Below, in pieces: positions 3,495 through 63,866 of a stretch of DNA of 64,000 nucleotides. The stretch covers positions 1-64,000 of the IMG/VR virus record IMGVR_UViG_3300021963_000023; one strand, given 5' to 3'. Below the pieces are notes generated by a model. The model saw only the letters and a program-made list of their open reading frames with translations, had not been told where the DNA came from and did not search any database. Position numbers and translations under genes: made by a program. The stretch's first letter is position 1, and every line of letters begins with the position of its first letter.

Positions 3495-4130
3495 ATGAAA
3501 TTTAAAGACATATTAGTTACAAAAGGATTAGATGAAGCAACACCAGTTGAAAAACCTGAACTAGGTTCTGGAGCAGATCATTATATATTCCCATCCAAGC
3601 GTAATCCAAACAAAGTATATAAACTAGGTTCAGAACATGCTGTGGATTTCTGGTATGATTTATTTAAAAACCATCCATCAATTTTCCCTGTTGTTTATAA
3701 GAGAGGTAAAACCAGAATGAAACTAGATCGAGATAAGGTGGTGTTTCAAGACAATAACTTTGTTAAACTTAAAGCCGGGTCTATTGTCCCTGTTGCTTAT
3801 GTTGAAATGGAAAAGTTAGACCCCAAGAGAGCTGAAAACGAATGGAAGATGTTGGATTTTGCGATTACAGATATAACTGAAGATCAATGGGATTTTCAAG
3901 ACTATGTTCTCCATTTTGCAATATTTGAAAGCTCCAACATGAAACCAGATTTTGATTTAATGTTACACGTTTTTGACGAGCTAAAGATAAATTATCCAGA
4001 TGAATATAAAATGATTACAAGATTTTTGGATTTAATCATTGAAGTCAAGAAAGTTAACAAACATCCCGATTTACATATGTATAACTTTGGCTATGACATG
4101 AAGGGTAATCTAAAATGTTTGGATATATAG
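3495..4130 (+). CDS. protein-kinase-like fold protein
   Basis: LGSGADHYIF Gly-loop, VYK, MEKL, DLHMYN catalytic loop, C-terminal CLDI. Confidence 0.65.
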   Translation: MKFKDILVTKGLDEATPVEKPELGSGADHYIFPSKRNPNKVYKLGSEHAVDFWYDLFKNHPSIFPVVYKRGKTRMKLDRDKVVFQDNNFVKLKAGSIVPVAYVEMEKLDPKRAENEWKMLDFAITDITEDQWDFQDYVLHFAIFESSNMKPDFDLMLHVFDELKINYPDEYKMITRFLDLIIEVKKVNKHPDLHMYNFGYDMKGNLKCLDI

Positions 4131-39719: not shown

Positions 39720-40116
39720 TGGTGGAGGTGACGGGACTCGAACCCGTGTCTTTCCTGTTCAACAATAAATGACTACACGTTTATTCAATTGGTTCTCAAC
39801 TGACAAATAGTAAATTAATTACAGGAAATTTACAATACTGTTTTTGACTGGATTTTCAAGAGCCGTCAAATTTGCTCCAACACTCTTCGGGTGGTATTAC
39901 ACCTTAAAGGCTTCTGTTCCTAGGTTATATGCCAGTCGACCCGATTGTAGTTTCGCCTTAGGCTACTGCTACGTTAGAAGTTGCAAGCAAGCCTGCTACT
40001 TCCATGTTGTTATAAACGTTGCCGTCTAAAATTTTCCACCATGTATTAAAGTCATAGATGAAGTCTGACTACGTGCCATTTACCCCTGATACCTGAAATC
40101 AATGCCAGGCACCCCC
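39720..40116 (-). ncRNA. ssrA: tmRNA, tag (A)GNVYNNMEVAGLLATSNVAVA*
   Basis: 5' GGGGGUG pairs with 3' CACCUCC-ACCA with G3.U70; GGUUCGAGUCC T-arm; UAGAC before the resume codon; tag ORF 40023-39958; 397 nt. Confidence 0.93.
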
Positions 40117-40550: not shown

Positions 40551-41231
40551 TTACGCAATAGCTGGAAGCTCTTTTTCATATAAAGCCTCAAAAAATAGTT
40601 TATTTTTTTCCCATTGCTTATTAACCATACCGATGGATTTGTGAGTTAAACTGATCTTGGTTGTAACACCAATTTTAACACCTTCTTTGAAGTTCTCATA
40701 ACAAAATGAAATATCATAGAAGTGAAACCCTTTGAACTCCTCATTAAACTGTTTTTTCAGTCTTCTCCTGTCAACCATAAAGAATAAACCATCAACAACC
40801 ACAACAGGCTTTAAAACGTCCACAAAGGACCCTTTGGAGTAATGGTTAACGTGTCTTTTACCTTCATGAAGATGGCCAACAACACCAAACATATTATCTC
40901 TACTATCCCACCATCTTCCGCTTGTTAATTTATCGGTACCGGCTATACCGATAATACCATATTCAGAATGTTTTTGAAATAACTTAACTATTTTGGGAGT
41001 TATGTTAGCTGTCTCCAAAATAAGATCATCATGCATAAAAACAATAATATCATTTTTAGCTTCTTTTAGCCCTATGTTATAAATTTCAGTTAATGAATTA
41101 ACACCATCATTTTCATAAATTAATATTTCAGTTTTTGGGTGTGAAAACATTCTCTCAACATGTTTGAGATAAACATCATCAATTTTTCTTGTGGATATTA
41201 CCACCGTTACTACTTCGTTAGTCTTCGACAT
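40551..41231 (-). CDS. GT2-like glycosyltransferase
   Basis: YN.G...IIVFMHDD, GIIGIAG, VVVDGLF, GFHFYD. Confidence 0.75.
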   Translation of the reverse strand: MSKTNEVVTVVISTRKIDDVYLKHVERMFSHPKTEILIYENDGVNSLTEIYNIGLKEAKNDIIVFMHDDLILETANITPKIVKLFQKHSEYGIIGIAGTDKLTSGRWWDSRDNMFGVVGHLHEGKRHVNHYSKGSFVDVLKPVVVVDGLFFMVDRRRLKKQFNEEFKGFHFYDISFCYENFKEGVKIGVTTKISLTHKSIGMVNKQWEKNKLFFEALYEKELPAIA

Positions 41232-41967
41232 ATGTTGCTATTATTTGTCCGTCATATTCTTTTAATTCTACAACGATTGGTTTATTAATTGGGTTATAAC
41301 CCGGATTACAAATTGAGGCGTTTACAAATAATGTATCATCAACTTGTTTATCACCATACCCTTCATGAATATGACCAAACACATTTAATGCTGGTTTAAC
41401 ACGTTCCACATGGAACCTGAGTAATTCACAACCAACATTTACATTGGGTTGTCTCCAATTATTAACAAGATCTAATATACCATTTGGTGGACCATGTGTA
41501 ATTAATACGTCGGTATCTTCCGGAATCATCAACCACTTCTCTTCTAATTCTTTCCCTGATCTTTCCAAATTAAATGCCCAATCATAAAACCATGGTTGCC
41601 ATGGCGATCCATAAATTTTAATAGGTCTTGAAAATTCTGGTCTTTCAATTATCATAAAATCATCTTCCAAATAATATACATCAGATTGTGCTAAATTCTC
41701 TGGCGCCATTAAATTACGTAACCAATCATAATCACGTTTGTGATGTGGTTTATTAACTTGTTCAAAACAATGATCATGATTACCTGAAATGAAAATCTTA
41801 GCATCAAATCCTTGAATGTTTTGAAACCAATAGATAAACTTGGTAACATCCTTTTCTCCTCCTCTATTTGAGATGTCACCAGCATGGATCAATATGTCTC
41901 CTGATGGAATTTCATGCAACATATTATCATGCAAGCTATGCGTATCTGATATACAAACTATTCTCAT
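41218..41967 (-). CDS. calcineurin-like metallophosphoesterase
   Basis: SDTH, HAGD, GNHD, THGPP, FGHIHE. Confidence 0.9.
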   Translation of the reverse strand: MRIVCISDTHSLHDNMLHEIPSGDILIHAGDISNRGGEKDVTKFIYWFQNIQGFDAKIFISGNHDHCFEQVNKPHHKRDYDWLRNLMAPENLAQSDVYYLEDDFMIIERPEFSRPIKIYGSPWQPWFYDWAFNLERSGKELEEKWLMIPEDTDVLITHGPPNGILDLVNNWRQPNVNVGCELLRFHVERVKPALNVFGHIHEGYGDKQVDDTLFVNASICNPGYNPINKPIVVELKEYDGQIIATYVED

Positions 41968-43926: not shown

Positions 43927-44728
43927 AGGCTGAGATTACACCATTTAACGATTGACTTTGAGACATTATTTTTTTCTTCTCTTATCCACTACCTTTTGAG
44001 TAGTACCAATCAGCGACGGTCAATTAGATTAACCAATCCTTAAGTCGTTAGATACTCTTTTAATACTTATTACTCTTCGAGGTTGCCACCCCAATTAGTC
44101 CTTGCGGGACTAGAGAACTTTCTCAAAAATCATGTTGGGCTTGGGACCCCTTCATGGCCGAGAACCTCTCTCGACTGTGTAGTCACCTGTCTCCAACGAC
44201 TGACGAGCACTTTTCCTTTATTGTTTGTAGTTGTTAAACCAAAATTAACAAAGTTTGTTGGTTCCGAATGTGGAAAGTAGCGGCTCGTCTGCCAGCCAAG
44301 CCACCTTTTGAGCGACTCGATACTAAACTACTCTCTGAGATATCCCTATCTCCATATTTTTGGACTCCTTCGAAATTAAACTCTTGGTAGAATTTAACTA
44401 AGGATGACAACAGCACCACCTGTTTTTCACCATACCTTTCGGTTTTAAGACGCCCCTAATATTGAATCACACAATTATAAGATTGGAAATCCTACTTCTC
44501 GTAATAACTCTACAGATTATTCTTATTGGTGTTCCCACCTCAATCAAACAACTCGGATTGCTTGATCATCGAACCACTTTCCCTACAGTGTTACCCTCAG
44601 TACTTAAGGTTCAACGATATTCTGCTTGCCTACTCAAGATCCATTACTGAATCCGCAAAACACTTAACCAAATGCTTCACTTTATCCCACTTTCATGGTT
44701 TATTTTAATCGACCATAGGCGGCCAATA
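43927..44728 (-). ncRNA. large (~800 nt) structured ncRNA, GOLLD-like
   Basis: no credible ORF; GC-richer than flanks; many hairpins (ACC-GAAA-GGT, TAGTCC-CGCAA-GGACTA, CTAC-TCAAAAG-GTAG); own promoter and terminator; next to a phage tRNA array; size fits GOLLD; ends approximate. Confidence 0.65.
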
Positions 44729-44838: not shown

Positions 44839-45300
44839 TTATATTCTAACTAGGTGATTTGCGGCATAGGTTGTTAATGCGCCTAGGTGTTTATACCTAA
44901 CTTTATACCCCATACCTTCAACCATTCCAACAGCTTGTCTAAGAACAGAGTTTGACTTAAACCTTGAATCTGGATTTAAATCAATATCTATCCATGTTGG
45001 CTTTGGCAAACCGTTCTCTTTTAGATATTCCGCAATTTCAATGGATTTCCAAACTTCATTTAACAACCTAATTGGCATGTTATATTCCATTGGTAAAATC
45101 TCTTTATTACATAAAACGTGTGCACCTTTACCTGGAGTATATAGTGCAATCACAACACCATAAATTGTTTTTTTATGACCATAGCATTGTGAATCTGATC
45201 CAATAAGAATTTCCACCCCACTTCTTAGTGAAACATATTCTTTGATGTAATTGATTACATCTGGTACTGGTGTCCCGTAGAGTGTTTTAAATTCTTTCAT
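44839..45300 (-). CDS. RNase H-like YkuK/DUF458 family protein
   Basis: IGSDSQ, GKGA, RLLNEVWKS, IDIDLN, AANH. Confidence 0.8.
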   Translation of the reverse strand: MKEFKTLYGTPVPDVINYIKEYVSLRSGVEILIGSDSQCYGHKKTIYGVVIALYTPGKGAHVLCNKEILPMEYNMPIRLLNEVWKSIEIAEYLKENGLPKPTWIDIDLNPDSRFKSNSVLRQAVGMVEGMGYKVRYKHLGALTTYAANHLVRI

Positions 45301-45327
45301 TTTTTTTTAATTTAATTCATTTTATTG

Positions 45328-45499
45328 CTGTGGTAGCAGGATTCGAACCGTGCAGATGGAGATTCAATTAGTAACAAAGCGCTTGCAAGCCGGTGGTCTA
45401 CCCCGATATTACTAATCTATTTCTTTGTCCACGTCCGGGAGACAACCGGATGCGTTTGCCAAGGTCATAACTGAGACAACCAAATTTCGCCATACCACA
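45328..45499 (-). ncRNA. giant tRNA-like RNA (GUC anticodon, D-loop insert, ~80-nt variable arm)
   Basis: 7-bp acceptor UGUGGUA/UACCACA, UCCGG/CCGGA anticodon stem, GGUUCGAAUCC. Confidence 0.65.
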
Positions 45500-45593
45500 A
45501 TATTTGAACTAACTCGCTGGAAACCTTATAACTGATCTGATCAGCTTATGGGTTAAGTACTCCGTTTATGTTAGTTCCTCGTACTCCAAGTTG

Positions 45594-45677
45594 CGGAGAG
45601 TACTGGATTCGAACCAGTGCACCGATTGCTCGATGACAGTTTAGCAAACTGCTCCATTACCGCTCTGGCAACTCTCC
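45594..45677 (-). tRNA. tRNA-Ser(GCT)
   Basis: cloverleaf with long variable arm. Confidence 0.9.
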
Positions 45678-45682
45678 TAAAT

Positions 45683-45982
45683 TTATTTTTTAACTTTTCT
45701 TTTATTTAAAAATTCATAAAACTTATTTTCATAGTTTATAAAGTGTGTCATAGCAAACCATTTACCAAAAACACTACCACCTATATAAACAATAATAACA
45801 ACCCAATCACTTGCAAATAATCTTTCTAATGAAAAATATATTGAACCCAAAGAAACGAGATTAATCCATATTGAATTGAATACAAGTTGCTTAACCTTAT
45901 TCTCATAGGTATATTTTATTTCCATTGTTTTAAAAATGTTGAATAATACCTGAAAGAAAAACACTAATACATATAACCACAT
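45683..45982 (-). CDS. small three-TM membrane protein
   Basis: hydrophobic ORF between tRNAs. Confidence 0.7.
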   Translation of the reverse strand: MWLYVLVFFFQVLFNIFKTMEIKYTYENKVKQLVFNSIWINLVSLGSIYFSLERLFASDWVVIIVYIGGSVFGKWFAMTHFINYENKFYEFLNKRKVKK

Positions 45983-45998
45983 AACATCATTTTTTTTG

Positions 45999-46069
45999 TT
46001 GTCCCTCTAGGATTCGAACCTAAACAAACTGCACCAAAAACAGTTGTGCTACCGTTACACCAAAGGACA
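45999..46069 (-). tRNA. tRNA-Gln(TTG)
   Basis: cloverleaf. Confidence 0.88.
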
Positions 46070-46134
46070 ATATAATCATCACGGAGAATGTAGATTTTCA
46101 CTAACTCGATTTAGCGGCCTCTATGATGATTTTG

Positions 46135-46207
46135 AGCGAATAACAGGCTTCGAACCTGCAACCCCCAGTTTGGAAAACTAGTGCTCTACCAATTGAGCTA
46201 CATTCGC
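46135..46207 (-). tRNA. tRNA-Gly(TCC)
   Basis: cloverleaf. Confidence 0.9.
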
Positions 46208-46305
46208 ATTCATAGTAGGTATGTGAGTACCCACCTCACAACACTACTACGTTTTAATGGATGAAAAACATCTATCTTTCTTTCGGGCTACCATTAAGCC
46301 CCATG

Positions 46306-46379
46306 AGCTTCCTGTCAGAATCGAACTGACGACCTACTGATTACAAATCAGTCGCTCTGGCCTGCTGAGCTAAGGAAGC
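46306..46379 (-). tRNA. tRNA-Thr(TGT)
   Basis: cloverleaf. Confidence 0.9.
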
Positions 46380-46384
46380 GTTTG

Positions 46385-46458
46385 TGGACCAGCCTGGGCT
46401 CGAACCAGGGACCTATTCATTATGAGTGAAGTGCTCTAACCAACTGAGCTACAAGTCC
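46385..46458 (-). tRNA. tRNA-CAT (Ile2 or Met)
   Basis: cloverleaf, CTCATAA loop, Ile-like body. Confidence 0.85.
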
Positions 46459-46464
46459 AAAAGG

Positions 46465-46583
46465 TGCCGGTGGAAGGATTGCTTACCTCCACGGTGTCCA
46501 TTTCGGATACACCACCTATCTAGAATACGGGACGTCTAATAATTTCTATTCGAATTCAAAATTATTCATTCCGCCACACCGGC
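46465..46583 (-). ncRNA. aberrant tRNA-Leu-like RNA with D-loop hairpin insert and probable CUA anticodon
   Basis: GCCGGUG/CACCGGC acceptor, A73, long variable arm, loop UUCUAGA, non-canonical T-loop. Confidence 0.55.
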
Positions 46584-46591
46584 ATATATCT

Positions 46592-47131
46592 TTACTCTAC
46601 ATTAGTTGTTGGATCATACTGAAATTTAATATGTGTGAATCCAAGTTCTAAATTATTCGTTATTTCAATTTTATCTTCGTCAATGTTATATGAACACATG
46701 TCACAATTCCAAAGCGAATTCCTTAATCCTTCTTTAAATTTTTTCATGTCTTTAATCCCAATTAAATTAAACACACATTCTAAAGTTTCTGGTAGATATT
46801 TTTTTTCTAAAAACTTGTTATGATTAAAATATGCTTCCCATTTTTCTTTGTTTCCTGAATCACCTCTTTCATGTGTGCAACTGTTAAACCACTCATCATC
46901 TAGTCTATTATTTTCAATTTCATCTTTTTCACTTACCTTAATAACTTTTCTTGAATGGATCATATCAGTTGATAATGTTGGGAGGTGATTATCGACAATA
47001 TTTTCGCCAATATAATATCCTAATTGGTAATCCATACTTACATTCTCAAGATACTCTTCATTTTTTTTAATTTGACCAATCTTATATTCTGGTTTTTTTA
47101 TTTCTTCTAATATTTCTTCAAGCGATCTCAT
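46592..47131 (-). CDS. hypothetical protein
   Basis: 179-aa ORF within the tRNA array. Confidence 0.75.
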   Translation of the reverse strand: MRSLEEILEEIKKPEYKIGQIKKNEEYLENVSMDYQLGYYIGENIVDNHLPTLSTDMIHSRKVIKVSEKDEIENNRLDDEWFNSCTHERGDSGNKEKWEAYFNHNKFLEKKYLPETLECVFNLIGIKDMKKFKEGLRNSLWNCDMCSYNIDEDKIEITNNLELGFTHIKFQYDPTTNVE

Positions 47132-47158
47132 GTTAATTAAATTTATTTCATTTTATTG

Positions 47159-47239
47159 TTGGGATAGACGGACTCGAACCGCCGAACTCGATGAGAGCTG
47201 ATTTACAGTCAGCCGCAATTGCCACTATGCGATATCCCA
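47159..47239 (-). tRNA. tRNA-Tyr(GTA)
   Basis: cloverleaf with variable arm. Confidence 0.88.
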
Positions 47240-47247
47240 ATTTAATG

Positions 47248-47329
47248 TGACCAAGGAGAGACTCGAACTCTCAAGCCTTACGGCACCAGATCCTAAATCT
47301 GGCGTGTCTACCAATTCCACCACTCGGCC
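47248..47329 (-). tRNA. tRNA-Leu(TAG)
   Basis: cloverleaf. Confidence 0.92.
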
Positions 47330-47336
47330 ATTGTTG

Positions 47337-47409
47337 CGCTCCCTGAGGGTCACGATCCCCCGACCCCAAAATTAACAGTTTTGTGCTCTACCAACTGAGC
47401 TAAGGAAGC
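47337..47409 (-). tRNA. tRNA-Asn(GTT)
   Basis: cloverleaf; atypical T-loop ATCGTGA. Confidence 0.82.
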
Positions 47410-47414
47410 GAATG

Positions 47415-47489
47415 TAGGGTAAAGAGGACTCGAACCTCCACGATGTCTTGCTCCCAAAGCAAGCGGCCTAGCCATTGGCCCATTACCCT
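47415..47489 (-). tRNA. tRNA-Pro(TGG)
   Basis: cloverleaf. Confidence 0.85.
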
Positions 47490-47496
47490 ATTTTAG

Positions 47497-47570
47497 TGAT
47501 TCGGAAAGGATTCGAACCTTTGACCCCAAACTTAGAAGGTTTGTGCTCTATCCAGCTGAGCTACCGAACC
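47497..47570 (-). tRNA. tRNA-Arg(TCT)
   Basis: cloverleaf. Confidence 0.92.
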
Positions 47571-47685
47571 AATTAATGTAATGTCTGTACGGTTTGTATC
47601 AAATCCGCACCTTTATACGTGCTTCAAATGTTTCCATTTCATACATAGCGTCCGTTCCGTCACCTATTTCTAAGTCATTACATTG

Positions 47686-47770
47686 TACCTGGGGCGGGAC
47701 TTGAACCCGCACGGAACTTTCGTCCCAACAGATTTTAAGTCTGTCATGTATACCATTTCATCACCCAGGC
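47686..47770 (-). tRNA. tRNA-Leu(TAA)
   Basis: cloverleaf. Confidence 0.9.
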
Positions 47771-47786
47771 ATTTGTTTTTCCAATA

Positions 47787-47833
47787 TGTCAAAGAACTTT
47801 ATCAAATATAAGAATAATAAATTATAAAACAAA
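47787..47833 (-). promoter_or_regulatory. Bacteroidetes promoter + boxA
   Basis: TTTG-N19-TATATTTG (47803-47833), then AGTTCTTTGACA (47787-47798). Confidence 0.72.
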
Positions 47834-47863
47834 AAACCCGAACATTTTTAGTTGTTCGGGTTT
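47826..47863 (-). terminator. terminator of putative attenuator 2
   Basis: AAACCCGAACA/TGTTCGGGTTT plus T-tract. Confidence 0.75.
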
Positions 47864-47884
47864 CGATATTAGTTAAAAAAAGTA

Positions 47885-47992
47885 TTATCCTTTATTGATA
47901 TCCGAACATATGTAGCATAATGGTTGCACACCATACCCATTACCATTGTTAAGGGGTCTCGTACTTGTCAATATGTTATTTATATTCTTCAT
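47885..47992 (-). CDS. 35-aa putative leader peptide MKNINNILTSTRPLNNGNGYGVQPLCYICSDINKG
   Basis: read by eye; lies between a TATCTTTG promoter (48011-48018) and a terminator. Confidence 0.55.
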   Translation of the reverse strand: MKNINNILTSTRPLNNGNGYGVQPLCYICSDINKG

Positions 47993-48041
47993 CGTTTTAA
48001 TAAGTATACGCAAAGATAAGAAAAAACTGAATACTAAAAAA

Positions 48042-48455
48042 TTATTTTATTTTATAAGATAAACCAATTCCTGGTGAAAAATTAGAACCCACTAAATTTC
48101 CTATTATCCATAGTTTCAAATCAGAAGATTTTAATGCGTTATACCCAATAAATGCGTTTATCTTGTTTTCGTTATTAACTGGTTGTATACCAGCCCCGAT
48201 TAAAATTTTATCGGGTTGTAACATTTTTAAAATTCCTAATTTTAAATTCGACGTGATTGAACCAGTTTTTTGGTTTGCCAAATTTGTGTCATTGTAAGGT
48301 GCTCCGACGTATAACCCCCACGTGTTTTTTAATGCGCCGACCGTAATGTAACCATCTAATCCTTTGTTTGTTGCTGATACGAACACTTCTTTTTGTCCGT
48401 AGGTCACTGCCTTCACTCCCAATAGCATCATGACCAATATAATTTTTAGTTTCAT
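48042..48455 (-). CDS. small secreted beta-strand/barrel-like protein
   Basis: signal peptide; C-terminal GIGLSYKIK. Confidence 0.65.
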   Translation of the reverse strand: MKLKIILVMMLLGVKAVTYGQKEVFVSATNKGLDGYITVGALKNTWGLYVGAPYNDTNLANQKTGSITSNLKLGILKMLQPDKILIGAGIQPVNNENKINAFIGYNALKSSDLKLWIIGNLVGSNFSPGIGLSYKIK

Positions 48456-48512
48456 CTATGTAGAGACCGTAGTCTCTGTCTATCTTAATAAATATAAAGA
48501 TAAATTTGTTTG

Positions 48513-48584
48513 TACTCGGTACGGGATTCGAACCCGTGCTACGTCCGTGAAAGGGACGCGACCTAACCACTAGTCGAACCGAGC
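48513..48584 (-). tRNA. tRNA-Glu(TTC)
   Basis: cloverleaf. Confidence 0.92.
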
Positions 48585-48589
48585 AATCA

Positions 48590-49018
48590 TTAATGATTTT
48601 TATGATTACCCTTGTGATTATCAATTAAAGGAAATTTTAAACCAAACGTTTTTAATTCTTTATCAGTTGATTGAGAATAAACAAAACTAATTGGAGAATT
48701 TTTTATTGGTTTAAAATCAATACCCCACATTGCCATAGTTGAGTGATTTTGCATATAACAAGCGGATAGCATTGCCCCAACTCTATTTTTTAAAAATCCA
48801 TATCTACTTCCCACCATTGTAATATCATAACCACCAATCGTTTTTGTAAAAGATATATGGGCCGCAATGTTTTTTGTTATGTTTTGCATTGCTTCAACTT
48901 CTATATAACCTTTATTCTTTCCGTGTAGATTTAGATTACCTCCCGTAACCGAAATCATTTGTCCTTTTGCAATTGTAGAAAGAAATACAACACATAGGAT
49001 TAAAAATGAATGTTTCAT
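48590..49018 (-). CDS. small secreted beta-strand/barrel-like protein
   Basis: signal peptide; alternating beta pattern, TFGLKFPL. Confidence 0.65.
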   Translation of the reverse strand: MKHSFLILCVVFLSTIAKGQMISVTGGNLNLHGKNKGYIEVEAMQNITKNIAAHISFTKTIGGYDITMVGSRYGFLKNRVGAMLSACYMQNHSTMAMWGIDFKPIKNSPISFVYSQSTDKELKTFGLKFPLIDNHKGNHKNH

Positions 49019-49035
49019 ATATTTTATTTTTTTTT

Positions 49036-49125
49036 TGGCGGAGGCTCAGGGATTCGAACCCCAGATACCGTTTCCGGTATGACGGTTTTCAAGACCGTTC
49101 CATTCAACCACTCTGGCAAGCCTCC
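49036..49125 (-). tRNA. tRNA-Ser(TGA)
   Basis: cloverleaf, encoded CCA. Confidence 0.93.
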
Positions 49126-49148
49126 ATTAAAGGAACAAAAATTCAAGG

Positions 49149-49222
49149 CGGACTGTACGGGACTCGAACCCGTGAACTCTACCGTGACAGGGTAGCATGA
49201 TAACCAACTTCACCAACAATCC
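49149..49222 (-). tRNA. tRNA-Asp(GTC)
   Basis: cloverleaf. Confidence 0.9.
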
Positions 49223-49224
49223 GT

Positions 49225-49492
49225 GTTTGATCCTAACTCAGCTTAAGTTGCTCCATCCAAGTCTTGCTCTGGTTAACAAAGTCCTCGATGAGTTAGTTTC
49301 AAATAAAATAACAAGTTTTTCGTACGCTTTTGTACATCATAACCGATTATTTCTAACCGGTGGTTACATTTTCGTCAATTGGTTAATTACTCCCGACTTA
49401 TTGTAACTCTACCCACACCGCTTTAATACCGCGAATCAAGACGGCTTTTCGGGATTTATATACCGTGGGCTTCCACCACAGTCGTCACCTGT
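49225..49492 (-). ncRNA. candidate ~265-nt ncRNA
   Basis: no credible ORF; own TTTG-N19-TATATTTG promoter (49497-49527); local hairpins. Confidence 0.45.
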
Positions 49493-49535
49493 TATACAAA
49501 TATAAATTAAATTTTTTAAAATTCAAAATATATTT

Positions 49536-49608
49536 TGGTTGCGGAGCCAAGAATCGAACTTGGATGCACAGGCTTATGATACCTGGCGGGTTACCTAACC
49601 TCTCCGCA
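49536..49608 (-). tRNA. tRNA-Met(CAT) with reduced D-arm
   Basis: UGCGGAG/CUCCGCA acceptor, CAT loop, TTCGA, encoded CCA. Confidence 0.75.
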
Positions 49609-49611
49609 ATA

Positions 49612-49688
49612 TGGGGTGATCGACGAGATTCGAACTCGCTTTATTCTAGCGCCACAAGCTAGTGCTCTACCATACGAGCATCGATCAC
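49612..49688 (-). tRNA. tRNA-His(GTG)
   Basis: cloverleaf, C73, CCA. Confidence 0.88.
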
Positions 49689-49690
49689 AG

Positions 49691-49761
49691 AGTCAAGTAT
49701 TGGATTCGAACCAATGTACGAGGTTTTGCAGACCTCTACCTAACCACTCGGCCAACCTGAC
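49691..49761 (-). tRNA. tRNA-Cys(GCA)
   Basis: cloverleaf, U73. Confidence 0.9.
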
Positions 49762-49821
49762 TTTTTGTTCACTTATGTTCTCTGTTCACGGACCGTGAAC
49801 AAACAAAATTTGTGAACACTG

Positions 49822-49893
49822 AGGTCTCTAAAGGATTTGAACCCTTACTTCAACGTCCGTAGCGTTGCGTGCTATCCGTTACACCAAAAGACC
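49822..49893 (-). tRNA. tRNA-Arg(ACG)
   Basis: cloverleaf. Confidence 0.88.
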
Positions 49894-49897
49894 AATT

Positions 49898-50101
49898 TTA
49901 CTTCCATTGAGTTTTTCGGTTATACTTCCAACCTCTATACTCTCTTCTTTTATGGGATTCAATCGGTTTCCCGTTACCGTGTCTTCCATGAACAAAAGTT
50001 GGGGAACAGTCATAATACCAACTTCCGTTTCTTTTCTGACATATGAAACAATAGTTGTGTGATTGTTTCTTTGCTTTTACTTTGTACTCTTTGTTTGTCA
50101 T
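49898..50101 (-). CDS. small basic Cys/His protein
   Basis: CFIC...C...H; co-oriented with the tRNAs. Confidence 0.55.
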   Translation of the reverse strand: MTNKEYKVKAKKQSHNYCFICQKRNGSWYYDCSPTFVHGRHGNGKPIESHKRREYRGWKYNRKTQWK

Positions 50102-50180
50102 ATTGCATTAGTTTAACTAATGCTGGTCATATTTCTTTTTCATACTTTACAAATTGTAAGTGTTTTACTTTACATATTAT

Positions 50181-50254
50181 TGGCACGGGTGGAGAGATTC
50201 GAACTCCCATCGACGGTTTTGGAGACCGGAATGCTACCATTGCACCACACCCGT
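50181..50254 (-). tRNA. tRNA-Trp(CCA)
   Basis: cloverleaf, CCA. Confidence 0.9.
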
Positions 50255-50259
50255 GTATG

Positions 50260-50333
50260 TGATCCCTACAAGACTCGAACTTGTGACTCCCTCATTAAAA
50301 GTGAGGTGCTCTAGCCAACTGAGCTAAGAGATC
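50260..50333 (-). tRNA. tRNA-Lys(TTT)
   Basis: cloverleaf. Confidence 0.92.
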
Positions 50334-50338
50334 AATTG

Positions 50339-50411
50339 TGGAGAAAGTTGGTTACGCTCCAACTCCTAAGGATTTTCAGTCCTTCGCTTCTACTAAGTTA
50401 GCTTCATCTCC
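50339..50411 (-). tRNA. tRNA-Phe(GAA)
   Basis: cloverleaf; atypical T-loop AGCGTAA. Confidence 0.78.
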
Positions 50412-50416
50412 TTATG

Positions 50417-50489
50417 TTGGAATGATAAGACTCGAACCTATAACCTTCCGCGTATCAGGCGGATGCTCTCACCATTGAGCTACATTCCA
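50417..50489 (-). tRNA. tRNA-Ile(GAT)
   Basis: cloverleaf, loop CTGATAC. Confidence 0.85.
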
Positions 50490-50492
50490 ATT

Positions 50493-50565
50493 TGGTGGAC
50501 ACGTAGGGAATCGAACCCTTTCACTCTGATTGCAAATCAGGTGGTCTGCCATTGACATCCGGCCC
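50493..50565 (-). tRNA. tRNA-Ala(TGC)
   Basis: G3.U70, TGC loop, CCA; imperfect acceptor stem. Confidence 0.75.
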
Positions 50566-61842: not shown

Positions 61843-62196
61843 TTATTTTTTATTTTTTGTCAAGCTTTTATACAAACTTATTATTTCAGAACATTTTTCA
61901 TAATCTTCTATATCTTCAAAATATGGGATTACATGATCAATAAGAATATCGGGATCTTTTTTAGATAATTGAAATTCTGTTTTCCAGTCCATTATCTCAC
62001 CTTTACTCAATAATAAGCTAGCATTAACAACAAATTTAATTTCTTTTTTTCTTGTTGTTATTAAATGTTTAAACGAATCAACAACACCACCATAAATTAA
62101 TGGTTTGTTTTTATCTAAAAAATCTTCAAAAGAGTTATATTTTCCAGTTACGTGAACATCAAGTGTTTCTGGTTCGTTGGTGTTAGTTGTTCTCAT
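61843..62196 (-). CDS. hypothetical protein with UVR-like C-terminus
   Basis: EDIEDYEKCSEI. Confidence 0.6.
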   Translation of the reverse strand: MRTTNTNEPETLDVHVTGKYNSFEDFLDKNKPLIYGGVVDSFKHLITTRKKEIKFVVNASLLLSKGEIMDWKTEFQLSKKDPDILIDHVIPYFEDIEDYEKCSEIISLYKSLTKNKK

Positions 62197-63430
62197 TTTT
62201 AAATGGTTTTGAGTATGTTGGGTATAATAATTTCCAAATAGTTTGTTTAGGGTTTATCGAATCTAACATGTTAAATAAAATATTAGAGTGCCTATATTGT
62301 TTTGCTCTTAAAGCAAAGTCTTTTCTACTTAAATTTCGACCATTTAAATTTTCAAATATTTCTCTATAATCTTTTTCTATGTTTTCAAATCTTACTGTTA
62401 AATCACGGGCGGTTTCTTTTACCCAATTATTAAATTCATCCGGCACCTTTTCAAGTAATTCATCGAATGGTTTATTGTCTTTTAGGTATTCCCAAATATC
62501 TCTATTCGAGATGTTTGTTAGGATTCTGTGTAGGCGAATGTATTCGTCACCTTTTATTTTCATTCGAAAGCCATTCTTAAATCTGATTACATACCCTTCT
62601 TTATCGTTACTAATCTCTTCTTTAAGTAAATCATATCCTTCTCCCCATGTTTTATATAGGGTAACAACATTAATGTTTAAATTTTTTATTAGATTTTTTA
62701 ATCTAATATCTTCATTATTATCGTTGTGTATATTAACCTCATCACCAGTTTTGGTGTGGATCATACCAAGTAAAATTAAATCTTCAAAATCATAGTTACA
62801 AACTATTCTGTTTTCTGGGTAAATAATTTCAAACAAATATGTGTAATCTTTTGCCAATCGATTGTAGTCATATTTCTCTAATAATTCTCGACCTTTAATT
62901 GCTTGTGGCGAAGTAAATGAACCACGTGTTGCTAATATCCATTCACCCTTTGTTTTTGGTGTTGGGTCATAATAAGTGTTATCAAAATCAGGTAAATTGT
63001 TTGGATCAAAGAATCTTTCCATACCCGTTTCATAATTGTTATTAAACCATATGTTATATCTTCTTTCATCAGTTAATTCTTCTTCATAATAAAAAAGAAT
63101 ACCTAATGAACCATCCATTTTTTCATATACCTCAAAATTTTCATTTGGTAAATCCTCAGGTTTATGTTCCTCATAATTGAAGAATTTCTTGAATGGTCTT
63201 GCAACAATTTCACCTTTAGTGTTTGTAACTAGCCCACGACATTGTATGGTAATATCATCCCATAGTCTCTCATATTGAACTCTTGGAGAATAATTCCAAA
63301 TAGTTAAATCAAGAGTCGGGTGAGTTTGTTTATGCAACAAACCATCTTTGTAATATTTTTCTAATGTTGCTAACACAGTTCTTGAAAGGATTTTTTGATG
63401 GAGGATAAAGAGTCTTGGTAAACGATTCAA
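62183..63430 (-). CDS. T4 Rnl1-type RNA ligase
   Basis: CRGLV, PFKKFFN, EKMDGS motif I, TRGSF, FEII, EGYVI, KIK; true start may be the GTG at 63376. Confidence 0.88.
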   Translation of the reverse strand: MNRLPRLFILHQKILSRTVLATLEKYYKDGLLHKQTHPTLDLTIWNYSPRVQYERLWDDITIQCRGLVTNTKGEIVARPFKKFFNYEEHKPEDLPNENFEVYEKMDGSLGILFYYEEELTDERRYNIWFNNNYETGMERFFDPNNLPDFDNTYYDPTPKTKGEWILATRGSFTSPQAIKGRELLEKYDYNRLAKDYTYLFEIIYPENRIVCNYDFEDLILLGMIHTKTGDEVNIHNDNNEDIRLKNLIKNLNINVVTLYKTWGEGYDLLKEEISNDKEGYVIRFKNGFRMKIKGDEYIRLHRILTNISNRDIWEYLKDNKPFDELLEKVPDEFNNWVKETARDLTVRFENIEKDYREIFENLNGRNLSRKDFALRAKQYRHSNILFNMLDSINPKQTIWKLLYPTYSKPFKNENN

Positions 63431-63443
63431 TAAACTTACTCAT

Positions 63444-63866
63444 TTACAATTTGATTTGAAACCTATTTTTCATTTGTTTGAGTTTGTCTTCCGGAACGTT
63501 GTGTATGTTTTTACTATCGTGCCTGTTTTCAACAATTAAAGTGTGAATTCGATATTTGTATCTTTCTGCCATTTCAAAATACGGTTCCATTTCCCACTCT
63601 TCAGTAAAAGTATTGGCAATAACAATTTTTGAAAATTCTAATTTCATTCTATCTGCACATATTTGTTGACAATTAATATGTGCCTCTTTAATTTTACTAG
63701 CATCAAAGTGGTAAACACCCTTATCATCAGTAAAATAATTGTCTGCAGAAATAATATCTGGTTTAGTCCCCTGATTTGAATGAAGTATTACTTCTGCCAA
63801 TGTCGTTTTACCGGCGCCTGGCAGTCCTCTTAGTAATATTACATCACCGACCCATTCTTTTTCCAT
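63444..63866 (-). CDS. polynucleotide-kinase-like P-loop protein (AAA_33)
   Basis: LRGLPGAGKTT, SADNYF, NT, HNVP; adjacent to the RNA ligase. Confidence 0.8.
   Translation of the reverse strand: MEKEWVGDVILLRGLPGAGKTTLAEVILHSNQGTKPDIISADNYFTDDKGVYHFDASKIKEAHINCQQICADRMKLEFSKIVIANTFTEEWEMEPYFEMAERYKYRIHTLIVENRHDSKNIHNVPEDKLKQMKNRFQIKL

What the first reader, a model, noticed from the sequence alone, without database searches (positions are those of the whole stretch)
46465..46583. Aberrant Leu-type tRNA with D-loop hairpin insert and probable amber (CUA) anticodon
Seen: a Leu-like body with a ~29-nt AU-rich hairpin (AATAATTT/AAATTATT) in the D-loop, the same position as the insert in the 45328 RNA. 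The best anticodon register is CC(G)UA-UUCUAGA-UAGG, which reads CUA, and the T-loop is non-canonical. TAG is used as a real stop in this window (4130, 17194, 22194), so the genome is not recoded. Inference: a conditional suppressor, a mimic, or a D-loop intron class processed by phage healing/sealing enzymes.
Basis: partly seen in the sequence, partly recalled or inferred. Interest (0 to 1): 0.66.

Follow-up and report, generated by a model that had tools for sequence, protein, structure and literature searches.

The report
Phage tRNA-Leu-like RNA with CUAG loop
This is a real, conserved and so far undescribed phage RNA that evolved from a leucine tRNA, gained a hairpin in its D-loop and kept an invariant CUAG at the tip of a degraded anticodon arm; it looks more like a tRNA mimic than a working stop-codon suppressor.

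Summary
Window 46463-46583 (- strand) encodes a 121-nt RNA with a 7-bp acceptor stem, A73-CC, a Leu-type D stem, a 29-nt D-loop hairpin, a long variable arm and a T stem with an 8-nt non-UUC loop.

It belongs to a family of 84 distinct sequences on 125 phage or lake-metagenome contigs, always inside tRNA arrays. ARAGORN and Rfam miss it. Acceptor, T, D-hairpin and variable stems show compensatory changes.

In this copy the best register is a 7-nt loop UUCUAGA, which reads CUA. The family does not behave like a decoding anticodon arm:
- CUAG is invariant in 83/84 sequences, but 'U33' is present in only 51/84.
- Positions 33 and 38 covary (U/A, C/G, A/U).
- Spacing around CUAG varies.
- The stem is weak and mismatched.
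- One clade folds as a 5-bp stem with a CUAG tetraloop.

The 251-kb phage uses the standard code, and TAG stops have no back-up stops. A natural variant lacks the hairpin and still lacks G18G19, so an intron is not supported.

Best reading: a non-decoding tRNA-Leu mimic matured like a tRNA. A weak amber suppressor remains possible, and so does a self-pairing RNA with palindromic loops. The phage also carries GOLLD, tmRNA and a kinase plus Rnl1 repair pair.

The parts
46463..46583 (-). Whole tRNA-Leu-like RNA: 121 nt from G1 to the conserved A73-C-C
   Evidence: Sequence read. CM R1 scores it 114.7 bits. It aligns with 68 homologues in A3.
46577..46583 (-). Acceptor stem, 5' strand (GCCGGUG)
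   Evidence: It pairs with 46466-46472. The stem is 99.8% paired across 69 sequences, and 3 pairs changed on both sides.
46463..46472 (-). Acceptor stem 3' strand (CACCGGC), discriminator A73 and encoded CC
   Evidence: GGCACC is nearly invariant; two variants have GGUACC. It is followed by U, G or C, never by A.
46532..46574 (-). D arm: a 3-bp D stem (G10-U, C11-G, G12-C) enclosing the D loop and its insert
   Evidence: The D stem is 100% paired. UGGCGGAA...AGACG matches the Leu-type D arm. R1's next-best hits are canonical tRNA-Leu at 27-44 bits.
46538..46566 (-). 29-nt D-loop hairpin insert (stem AAUAAUUU/AAAUUAUU, loop containing AUUCGAAU) in place of G18G19
   Evidence: 41 of 43 distinct D-loop fillings fold as hairpins. 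Their stems covary and their loops hold UUCGAA, UGUACA, GGCC or UGCA palindromes. The insert is absent in L089.
46514..46531 (-). Degenerate anticodon-like arm: C-CCGUA / UUCUAGA / UAGGU
   Evidence: Only 55% of cells are paired in the family. The isolated arm folds at 0 to -4.4 kcal/mol. Lengths on each side of CUAG vary.
46520..46523 (-). Invariant CUAG tip (CUA at positions 34-36 and G37 in this copy's 7-nt register)
   Evidence: CUAG is present in 83 of 84 distinct sequences. The flanking positions 33/38 are complementary in 74 of 84.
46493..46513 (-). Long variable arm, 7 bp with one bulge and a CGAAAU loop
   Evidence: 95% paired. The divergent L015 keeps the helix through changes on both sides and keeps the loop.
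46473..46490 (-). T arm: stem GGAGG/CCUUC and an 8-nt loop UAAGCAAU without UUC
   Evidence: All 5 stem pairs changed on both sides. Loop pattern is UANNCARN (8 nt) or UGAAAGU-like (7 nt). Its conserved C tracks a D-loop G: 65 G/C and 4 U/A.

Best explanation
The locus encodes a member of a conserved, phage-specific family of tRNA-like RNAs derived from a type II leucine tRNA.

It is transcribed as part of the polycistronic tRNA array. It lies 8 nt after an ORF stop and 4 nt before tRNA-Met. Its intact 7+5-bp acceptor/T helix, U(-1) leader and A73-CC end should let RNase P, 3' trimming and CCA addition mature it like a tRNA (inferred).

The tRNA core is kept: U8, A14, A15, the 3-bp D stem, the variable arm and the T stem. 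Two functional poles are rebuilt.
- The elbow has lost G18G19 and UUC and carries a protruding D-loop hairpin.
- The anticodon arm has decayed into a weak, irregular stem that presents an invariant CUAG.

Most likely it no longer decodes. It probably acts as a tRNA-Leu mimic that engages a tRNA-binding partner through its tRNA-like body and CUAG tip. Candidate partners are a host or phage tRNA-handling or tRNA-targeting protein, another RNA, or a second copy of itself.

Shown: the family, its structure, its conservation pattern and its genomic context. Inferred: maturation, lack of decoding, and the partner.
For: Leu origin:
- The R1 model scores family members at >=84 bits.
- Its next-best hits are canonical phage tRNA-Leu at 27-44 bits.
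- A73, U8, A14, A15 and U48 are conserved.

tRNA-array context:
- tRNA-Met follows within 60 nt in 71 of 112 loci.
- The leader ends in U in most copies.

Signs that the arm is not under decoding constraint:
- U33 is present in only 51 of 84 sequences.
- Positions 33/38 are complementary in 74 of 84, with the intermediates U/G and A/A also seen.
- 7-9 nt lie 5' of CUAG and 5-7 nt lie 3' of it, and the arm folds at 0 to -4.4 kcal/mol.
- The clade L132/L137/L139/L140 forms a continuous 5-bp stem with a CUAG tetraloop.
- Rfam's tRNA model, run on the insert-free L089, skips the anticodon arm and scores 26.4 bits against a cut-off of 29.

No need for suppression.

tRNA-conflict context:
- An AAA_33 kinase and an Rnl1-type ligase sit together in the window.
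- Metallophosphoesterase, HAD_SAK_2 and PF04308 genes lie beside the arrays in relatives.

The family is phage-restricted. The only hit in 185,579 species genomes is a 558-bp MAG contig. There is no match in 50,697 isolated-phage records.
Against:
- CUA matches no essential host anticodon, so a simple anticodon-nuclease decoy is not obvious.
- Strict CUAG invariance, a purine at position 37 and canonical 8/6 spacing in about a third of variants, including this copy, are what a CUA anticodon would also show.
- The conserved ACC end and the intact EF-Tu-binding helix are compatible with aminoacylation.
- The family members are fairly close to one another (77% mean column identity), so some conservation may reflect shallow divergence.
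Confidence: 0.5

Rival explanations
1. It is a low-efficiency or conditional amber suppressor. Host LeuRS, which does not read the anticodon, charges it with leucine. It then reads UAG with a CUA anticodon, perhaps to perturb host termination or as a pre-adaptation to TAG recoding.
For: - CUA sits at positions 34-36 of a 7-nt loop with canonical spacing in this copy.
- CUAG is invariant.
- The RNA has a Leu-type body, A73 and an ACC end.
- ARAGORN at a lowered threshold reads (cta) in 5 of 8 calls.
- The phage is low-GC, few of its stops are TAG, and it carries its own tmRNA.
- Standard-code relatives of recoded phages can carry suppressor tRNAs (bioRxiv 10.1101/2021.08.26.457843).
Against: - U33 is missing in 33 of 84 variants, and positions 33/38 covary.
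- Spacing varies, the stem is weak, and one clade forms a tetraloop.
- G37 next to A36 is atypical for tRNAs that read U-starting codons (textbook knowledge).
- G18G19 and UUC, which matter for LeuRS and the ribosome, are missing.
- The genome has no in-frame TAG, no read-through candidates and no back-up stops. TAG is as common as TGA in relatives.
- Only TAG->Gln and TGA->Trp are reported for phages.
Confidence: 0.25
2. It is a self-associating RNA. The CUAG tip with its complementary flanks, and the palindromic tip of the D hairpin, form symmetric kissing loops between copies. These would build dimers or higher oligomers, as shown for OLE, ROOL and GOLLD.
For: - The hexamer N-CUAG-N' is self-complementary in 74 of 84 variants, switching among UCUAGA, CCUAGG and ACUAGU.
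- D-hairpin tips switch among the palindromes UUCGAA, UGUACA, GGCC, UGCA and GUGCAC.
- Switching between palindromic loop tetramers is the published signature of symmetric intermolecular kissing loops in OLE and GOLLD (bioRxiv 10.1101/2024.12.08.627333).
- GOLLD lies 2.1 kb away in the window and occurs in 3 of 10 large relatives' loci.
Against: - 10 of 84 variants have non-complementary flanks.
- Two D-hairpin classes have non-palindromic tips (GUAA, UUU) and one variant has no hairpin.
- Palindromic tips can arise as a by-product of perfect inverted repeats.
- Pure self-pairing does not explain why CUAG itself never changes.
- AU-rich 4-6-bp contacts are weak.
Confidence: 0.15
3. The D-loop hairpin is an intervening sequence. 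It is excised, and the phage kinase/ligase pair reseals the halves to give a conventional tRNA.
For: The phage encodes an AAA_33 polynucleotide-kinase-like protein next to an Rnl1-type RNA ligase, and a metallophosphoesterase. One natural variant lacks the insert.
Against: - The inserts share no boundary motif and vary from 0 to about 31 nt.
- The insert-free L089 still lacks G18G19 and a UUC T-loop and scores below Rfam's tRNA cut-off.
- The stems of the insert covary and its loop sequences are conserved, as expected for a retained functional helix.
- No RtcB or Rnl2 was found.
Confidence: 0.03
4. It is a decaying tRNA-Leu pseudogene or a chance tRNA-like fold.
For: The anticodon stem is mismatched and standard tRNA finders fail on it.
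Against: 84 distinct variants on 125 contigs keep four helices through compensatory changes, and they keep CUAG, the variable-arm loop and the ACC end.
Confidence: 0.01

Closest known systems
Bacterial type II tRNA-Leu
   Same: 7-bp acceptor stem with G1-C72, A73, U8/A14, A15/U48, the UGGCGGAA...AGACG D arm, a long variable arm and a 5-bp T stem. The family model cross-hits phage tRNA-Leu.
   Different: No G18G19. A hairpin sits in the D loop. The T loop has 7-8 nt and no UUC. The anticodon arm is weak and irregular. There is no Leu anticodon.
Phage-encoded suppressor tRNAs of recoded phages (crAss-like, Lak, Agate; Borges et al.)
   Same: Phage-borne, lies in a tRNA cluster, and carries CUA in the anticodon position in this copy.
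   Different: Those are canonical Gln- or Trp-type tRNAs in genomes with in-frame stops. This genome is standard-code, the RNA is Leu-type, U33 is not conserved and the elbow is rebuilt.
Non-canonical tRNAs: tRNASec, tRNAPyl, allo-tRNAs (review PMC7609411)
   Same: An altered D arm (tRNASec has a long D stem and a small loop). Loss of G18G19 and TΨC together with a CUA anticodon (tRNAPyl). A long variable arm with possible five-stem junctions and non-cognate anticodons (allo-tRNA).
   Different: Acceptor/T is the standard 7/5, not 8/5, 9/4 or 8/4. The variable arm is long, unlike tRNAPyl. The extra helix sits inside the D loop. The family is restricted to phage tRNA arrays.
Stable tRNA-like RNAs in the phage T4 tRNA cluster (species 1 and 2, rnaC/rnaD; recalled from memory, not compared here)
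   Same: Small stable RNAs of unknown function encoded among phage tRNA genes and matured by the tRNA-processing machinery.
   Different: No sequence or structure comparison was made. The one paper checked (PMC2330249) did not mention them.
Symmetric kissing loops of OLE, ROOL and GOLLD RNAs (bioRxiv 10.1101/2024.12.08.627333)
   Same: Loop sequences that stay self-complementary while switching between palindromes. The RNAs are phage-encoded and lie near tRNA islands.
   Different: Those are 400-800-nt ornate RNAs with solved multimers. This is a 90-124-nt tRNA derivative, and no assembly has been shown for it.

Membership tests
Canonical tRNA (Rfam RF00005 / ARAGORN) | Score at or above the curated threshold of general tRNA models | tested here: not met
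   No RF00005 hit at 46463-46583 even at E<=10. ARAGORN called 0 of 76 at default settings. The insert-free L089 scores 26.4 bits against a cut-off of 29.
Canonical tRNA (Rfam RF00005 / ARAGORN) | 7-bp acceptor stem, discriminator base and 5-bp T stem | tested here: met
   The acceptor is 99.8% paired and the T stem 87.5% paired, both with compensatory changes.
Canonical tRNA (Rfam RF00005 / ARAGORN) | G18G19 in the D loop pairing with a U54-U55-C56 T loop | tested here: not met
   The D loop is AAUG + hairpin + UAG. The T loop is UAAGCAAU. A single G-to-C co-variation between the D loop and the T loop is only hinted at.
Canonical tRNA (Rfam RF00005 / ARAGORN) | 5-bp anticodon stem, 7-nt loop and invariant U33 | tested here: not met
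   The stem is 55% paired. U33 is present in 51 of 84. Spacing is variable and the arm folds at 0 to -4.4 kcal/mol. One clade forms a tetraloop.
tRNA-Leu (type II) | A73, long variable arm, and Leu-type D arm and core (U8:A14, A15:U48) | tested here: met
   All are conserved in A3. The family model's next-best hits are tRNA-Leu(taa/tag).
tRNA-Leu (type II) | A leucine anticodon (NAG or NAA) | tested here: not met
   The loop is UUCUAGA. A UAG register would need C33 and a variable, sometimes pyrimidine, position 37.
tRNA-Leu (type II) | Aminoacylation by LeuRS | not testable with these tools
   This needs a charging assay. No class Ia synthetase is encoded by the phage record.
Amber suppressor tRNA | CUA at positions 34-36 of a 7-nt anticodon loop | tested here: inconclusive
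   Met in this copy and in variants with the same 8/6 spacing. Not met in the clades with shifted spacing or a tetraloop.
Amber suppressor tRNA | Genome shows in-frame TAG, read-through genes or TAG avoidance | tested here: not met
   Code 11 covers 92%, and reading TAG through gives no special gain. TAG junctions are separate genes. TAG-ending ORFs have no back-up stops. Counts in relatives are TAG 74 and TGA 75.
tRNA intron (archaeal bulge-helix-bulge or group I) | Conserved splice-site structure, and a canonical tRNA after removal | tested here: not met
   Inserts of 0 to about 31 nt share no boundary motif. The insert-free L089 is still non-canonical. At 29 nt the insert is far too short for a group I intron.
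Symmetric kissing-loop RNAs (OLE/ROOL/GOLLD type) | Loop stays self-complementary while switching between palindromes | tested here: inconclusive
   The CUAG flanks are complementary in 74 of 84. D-hairpin tips are UUCGAA, UGUACA, GGCC or UGCA, but two classes are non-palindromic.
Symmetric kissing-loop RNAs (OLE/ROOL/GOLLD type) | Demonstrated homo-oligomer | not testable with these tools
   This needs native gels, SEC-MALS or cryo-EM.
tRNAPyl | 3-nt variable loop, 6-bp anticodon stem and a 5-nt D loop | tested here: not met
   The variable arm is 21 nt, the arm is irregular, and the D loop carries a 29-nt insert.

The most novel reading that the evidence does not exclude
The RNA is a tRNA-derived building block that self-assembles. 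Its two self-complementary loop tips, the invariant CUAG with covarying flanks and the palindromic D-hairpin tip, would form symmetric kissing contacts between copies. The result would be dimers, rings or chains of tRNA-shaped units in phages that also make GOLLD nanocages. That would be a new use of the tRNA fold.
Probability: 0.15. Interest if true: 0.85.

Novelty: new variant of a known kind. Interest (0 to 1): 0.6.

Why it matters
Phage tRNA arrays are usually read as sets of decoding tRNAs. Here a whole group of freshwater jumbo phages keeps at least one, and apparently two, elaborately remodelled tRNA derivatives under purifying selection, and every standard tRNA and Rfam search misses them.

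If the RNA is a mimic, it points to an unknown partner in the conflict over tRNAs. That conflict already includes anticodon nucleases, PARIS, retron effectors, Schlafen nucleases and phage repair kits.

If it suppresses UAG, it would be the first Leu-type phage suppressor in a standard-code genome, and one with a non-canonical elbow.

If it self-pairs, it extends RNA-only assembly to the tRNA fold.

In any case the family, now with a covariance model and 84 sequences, can be annotated and tested directly.

Tried and rejected

**Isolated phages.** blastn of the region against 50,697 records matched only the flanking canonical tRNAs.

**Neighbour-protein route.** The 179-aa upstream ORF found only one relative. 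An exact T-arm pattern found none.

**Bacterial genomes.** The scan gave one 558-bp MAG contig with a true copy and one chance hit. This gives no host assignment.

**Recoding.**
- ORF coverage under TAG, TGA or TAA read-through showed no signal.
- Same-frame ORF pairs across TAG are separate genes.
- There are no back-up stops.

**Dedicated machinery in the 251-kb record.**
- Not found: class Ia synthetase, EF-Tu-type GTPase, CCA-adding enzyme, release factor, RtcB, Rnl2.
- HAD_SAK_2 also gave no hit, but its control search detected nothing anywhere, so that result is uninformative.
- The record is about 75% complete, so absence is weak evidence.

**DNA-level explanation for CTAG.** CTAG is not avoided in the genome (observed/expected 1.08).

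**UAG (Leu) register.** Rejected, because it needs an invariant C33 and a variable position 37.

**T4 rnaC/rnaD comparison.** The paper checked did not describe them, so that resemblance rests on memory.

**Chance hits.** L005, L008, L014, L063, L092 and L128 were pattern hits by chance and were excluded.

Full report
**1. What is there**

The window is the first 64 kb of a 251-kb IMG/VR jumbo-phage record with 32% G+C. Its - strand carries several RNA genes.
- A tmRNA at 39720-40116.
- A GOLLD RNA at 43927-44335 (314 bits).
- An array of 21 ARAGORN tRNAs plus a weak tRNA-Ala, spanning 45593-50565.

Neither ARAGORN nor Rfam, even at E<=10, reports anything at 46463-46583.

Read on the - strand, that stretch contains:
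- Acceptor stem GCCGGUG/CACCGGC, followed by A73 and CC.
- U8-G9 and a 3-bp D stem.
- A D loop in which G18G19 is replaced by a 29-nt AU-rich hairpin.
- An arm CC(G)UA / UUCUAGA / UAGG.
- A 7-bp variable arm with a CGAAAU loop.
- T stem GGAGG/CCUUC with an 8-nt loop UAAGCAAU.

The single-sequence fold keeps the acceptor, T and variable helices but is only mildly better than shuffles (z = -1.97).

**2. It is a family, not an accident**

The neighbouring ORF led to one syntenic relative, L002. There the acceptor pair 7-66 changed from U-A to A-U, and the D-loop hairpin has a different, shorter sequence.

Pattern scans then collected more copies.
- Scans used the variable arm and the D arm, across IMG/VR, JGI/ENA metagenomes and GTDB genomes.
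- They yielded 84 distinct sequences on 125 contigs, mostly from lake and freshwater samples.
- All copies lie in phage tRNA arrays.
- tRNA-Met(cat) follows within 60 nt in 71 of 112 loci. tRNA-Ala, Ser or Leu often precedes with a 4-5-nt spacer ending in U.

On the 69-sequence alignment A3:
- The acceptor stem is 99.8% paired, with three pairs changed on both sides.
- All five T-stem pairs are changed on both sides.
- The D stem is 100% paired.
- The variable arm is 95% paired.
- No shuffle of 500 reaches the observed covariation.
- Sliding the partner columns halves the pairing.

A covariance model (R1) scores members at 84-124 bits. Its next-best hits, at 27-44 bits, are the phages' own tRNA-Leu genes, including window 47684-47770. 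This supports a tRNA-Leu origin.

The family has no match among 50,697 isolated-phage records. Among 185,579 species genomes it matches only a 558-bp contig binned with an Algoriphagus MAG.

**3. The D-loop hairpin**

Of 43 distinct D-loop fillings, 41 fold as a hairpin.
- Within the window's class, the stem covaries, for example AAUAAUUUU/GAAAUUAUU, AAUGAUCUC/GAGAUUAUU and AAUAACUUU/AAAGUUAUU.
- In that class the loop GA(A/U)UUCGAAUA is conserved.
- Other classes have different stems with tips UGUACA, GGCC, UGCA, GUAA or UUU.
- One natural variant, L089, has no insert.

L089 still lacks G18G19 and a UUC T loop. It scores 26.4 bits on Rfam's tRNA model, against a cut-off of 29, and the model skips its anticodon arm.

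So the insert is a retained, selected helix and not a removable intron. It is the main reason the gene finders fail.

A D-loop G just before the insert tracks a conserved C in the T loop: G/C 65 times and U/A 4 times. This hints that one elbow pair survives. It is a lead, not a result.

**4. The anticodon question**

In this copy the geometry is canonical for CUA at positions 34-36. There are 8 nt between the D stem and C34, a 7-nt loop UUCUAGA, and 6 nt from G37 to the variable arm. The 5-position stem has three Watson-Crick pairs.

Across the family the picture changes.
- CUAG is present in 83 of 84 sequences.
- The base at '33' is U in only 51 of 84.
- Positions 33 and 38 are complementary in 74 of 84. 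The pairs are U/A 50, C/G 14, A/U 8, and G/U and U/G once each. The apparent intermediates A/A and U/G are also seen.
- 7-9 nt lie 5' of CUAG and 5-7 nt lie 3' of it.
- The isolated arm folds at 0 to -4.4 kcal/mol, and it is predicted unfolded in 25 of 69 sequences.
- In the clade L132/L137/L139/L140 the arm is a continuous 5-bp stem capped by a CUAG tetraloop.

The alternative UAG (Leu) register would require an invariant C33 and a position 37 that varies among A, G and U, so it fits even worse.

A decoding tRNA is expected to keep U33, a 7-nt loop and a stable 5-bp stem. By textbook knowledge, tRNAs that read U-starting codons carry A37, not G37. The family-level constraint is on a CUAG tip, not on an anticodon loop.

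**5. Does the phage need suppression?**

The evidence says no.
- ORFs of >=100 aa cover 92% of the genome under code 11.
- Reading TAG through adds 1.3 points, the same as TGA.
- Stop usage is TAA 208, TGA 34 and TAG 24.
- The ORFs ending at 4130, 17194 and 22194 do stop at TAG.
- Same-frame ORF pairs across a single TAG restart with their own ATG 2-15 codons later.
- TAG-ending ORFs are not followed by nearby back-up stops. The median extension is 13.5 codons, against 7 for TAA.
- In the relatives' contigs TAG (74) is as common as TGA (75).

The record is about 75% complete. In it I found no class Ia synthetase, EF-Tu-type GTPase, CCA-adding enzyme or release factor.

Published surveys report suppressor tRNAs in some standard-code relatives of recoded phages, but only TAG->Gln and TGA->Trp reassignments (bioRxiv 10.1101/2021.08.26.457843).

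**6. Context**

The phage encodes an AAA_33 P-loop kinase (63444-63866, -) directly upstream of a T4 Rnl1-type RNA ligase (62183-63430, -). It also encodes a calcineurin-type phosphoesterase at 41218-41967. Together these resemble a tRNA healing-and-sealing kit.

Beside the arrays in relatives lie several recurring genes.
- PF04308 RNaseH-like, in 23 loci and also at window 44839-45300.
- HAD_SAK_2, an RNA-repair HAD domain.
- Metallophosphoesterase.
- HNH endonuclease.
- Radical SAM/SPASM genes.

GOLLD occurs in 3 of 10 large relatives' loci.

tRNA-targeting defences and phage counter-tRNAs are now well documented (PMC10264068, PMC11464382, PMC11555353, PMC13056530). This makes a role in the conflict over tRNAs plausible, but nothing here shows it.

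**7. Palindromic tips**

The hexamer around CUAG stays self-complementary while switching among UCUAGA, CCUAGG and ACUAGU.

The D-hairpin tips switch among the palindromes UUCGAA, UGUACA, GGCC, UGCA and GUGCAC.

Kretsch et al. use exactly this pattern, loop tetramers switching between palindromes, as evidence for symmetric intermolecular kissing loops in OLE and GOLLD.

Against over-reading:
- 10 of 84 flanks are not complementary.
- Two hairpin classes have non-palindromic tips.
- Perfect inverted repeats give palindromic centres for free.
- Self-pairing does not explain why CUAG itself never varies.
- CTAG is not avoided in the genome (observed/expected 1.08), so a DNA-level cause is unlikely.

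**8. Verdict**

The feature is real. It defines an undescribed, phage-restricted family of tRNA-Leu-derived RNAs with five helices.

My estimates for how it works:
- A non-decoding tRNA mimic matured by the tRNA machinery: about 0.5.
- A weak or conditional Leu-inserting amber suppressor: about 0.25.
- A self-pairing RNA: about 0.15. This reading is a special case of a non-decoding RNA, so it overlaps the first estimate.
- A spliced D-loop intron: about 0.03.
- A pseudogene or chance fold: about 0.01.

The closest known things are type II tRNA-Leu, non-canonical tRNAs (Sec, Pyl, allo-tRNA; PMC7609411), phage suppressor tRNAs and, from memory, the T4 stable RNAs C and D. It fails the membership tests for a canonical tRNA and, at family level, for a suppressor.

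Noticed in passing
window 45324-45500 (-): A second conserved tRNA-like RNA family, about 177 nt. It has a covarying acceptor stem, a canonical GGUUCGAAUCC T arm and a D-loop hairpin (absent in L043). It also has a covarying 5-bp stem with an invariant loop YYGUCUC (GUC plus U37) and a conserved extra region of about 85 nt. Homologues occur in at least 36 of the fetched loci. It is not in Rfam.
   Followed up: partly
window 43927-44335 (-): A GOLLD RNA (RF02032, 314 bits) lies about 1 kb from the start of the tRNA array (45324) and 2.1 kb from this RNA. GOLLD is also present in 3 of 10 large relatives' loci.
   Followed up: partly
window 62183-63866 (-): An AAA_33 P-loop kinase (polynucleotide-kinase-like, 140 aa) sits directly upstream of a T4 Rnl1-type RNA ligase (415 aa). 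This looks like a tRNA healing-and-sealing pair. A calcineurin-type phosphoesterase at 41218-41967 could supply the phosphatase step.
   Followed up: partly
window 44839-45300 (-): A PF04308 RNaseH-like ORF abuts the second tRNA-like RNA. The same family lies beside the arrays in 23 relatives' loci. HAD_SAK_2, HNH endonuclease and radical SAM/SPASM genes also recur there.
   Followed up: partly
window 39720-40116 (-): A phage-encoded tmRNA with tag GNVYNNMEVAGLLATSNVAVA. Several relatives carry tmRNAs with different tags.
   Followed up: no
window 50496-50565 (-): A weak tRNA (29.7 bits) that ARAGORN misses. It reads UGC (Ala) and keeps G3:U70 but has two acceptor mismatches. No tRNA-Val was found in the array.
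   Followed up: no
window 45593-50489 (-), 3' ends of the tRNAs: Most of the phage's tRNAs are followed by C-A directly after the discriminator, not by CCA. A few encode CCA or CC. The Leu-like RNA has CC followed by U.
   Followed up: no
window 46070-46133 and 46208-46304 (-): Two unusually long spacers between tRNAs (64 and 97 nt) contain long imperfect hairpins. I did not check whether they are conserved.
   Followed up: no
window 46548-46554 (-), inside the D-loop hairpin: The conserved loop of this hairpin class contains UUCGAAU, the canonical T-loop heptamer, while the true T loop has lost it. This could be coincidence or a relocated T-loop motif.
   Followed up: no
L127 (JALRIY010000487.1, 558 bp): The only copy in bacterial genome bins is a 558-bp contig binned with an Algoriphagus (Bacteroidota) MAG. 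It carries tRNA-Ala, the Leu-like RNA and tRNA-Met. It is probably a mis-binned phage fragment and gives at most a weak host hint.
   Followed up: partly
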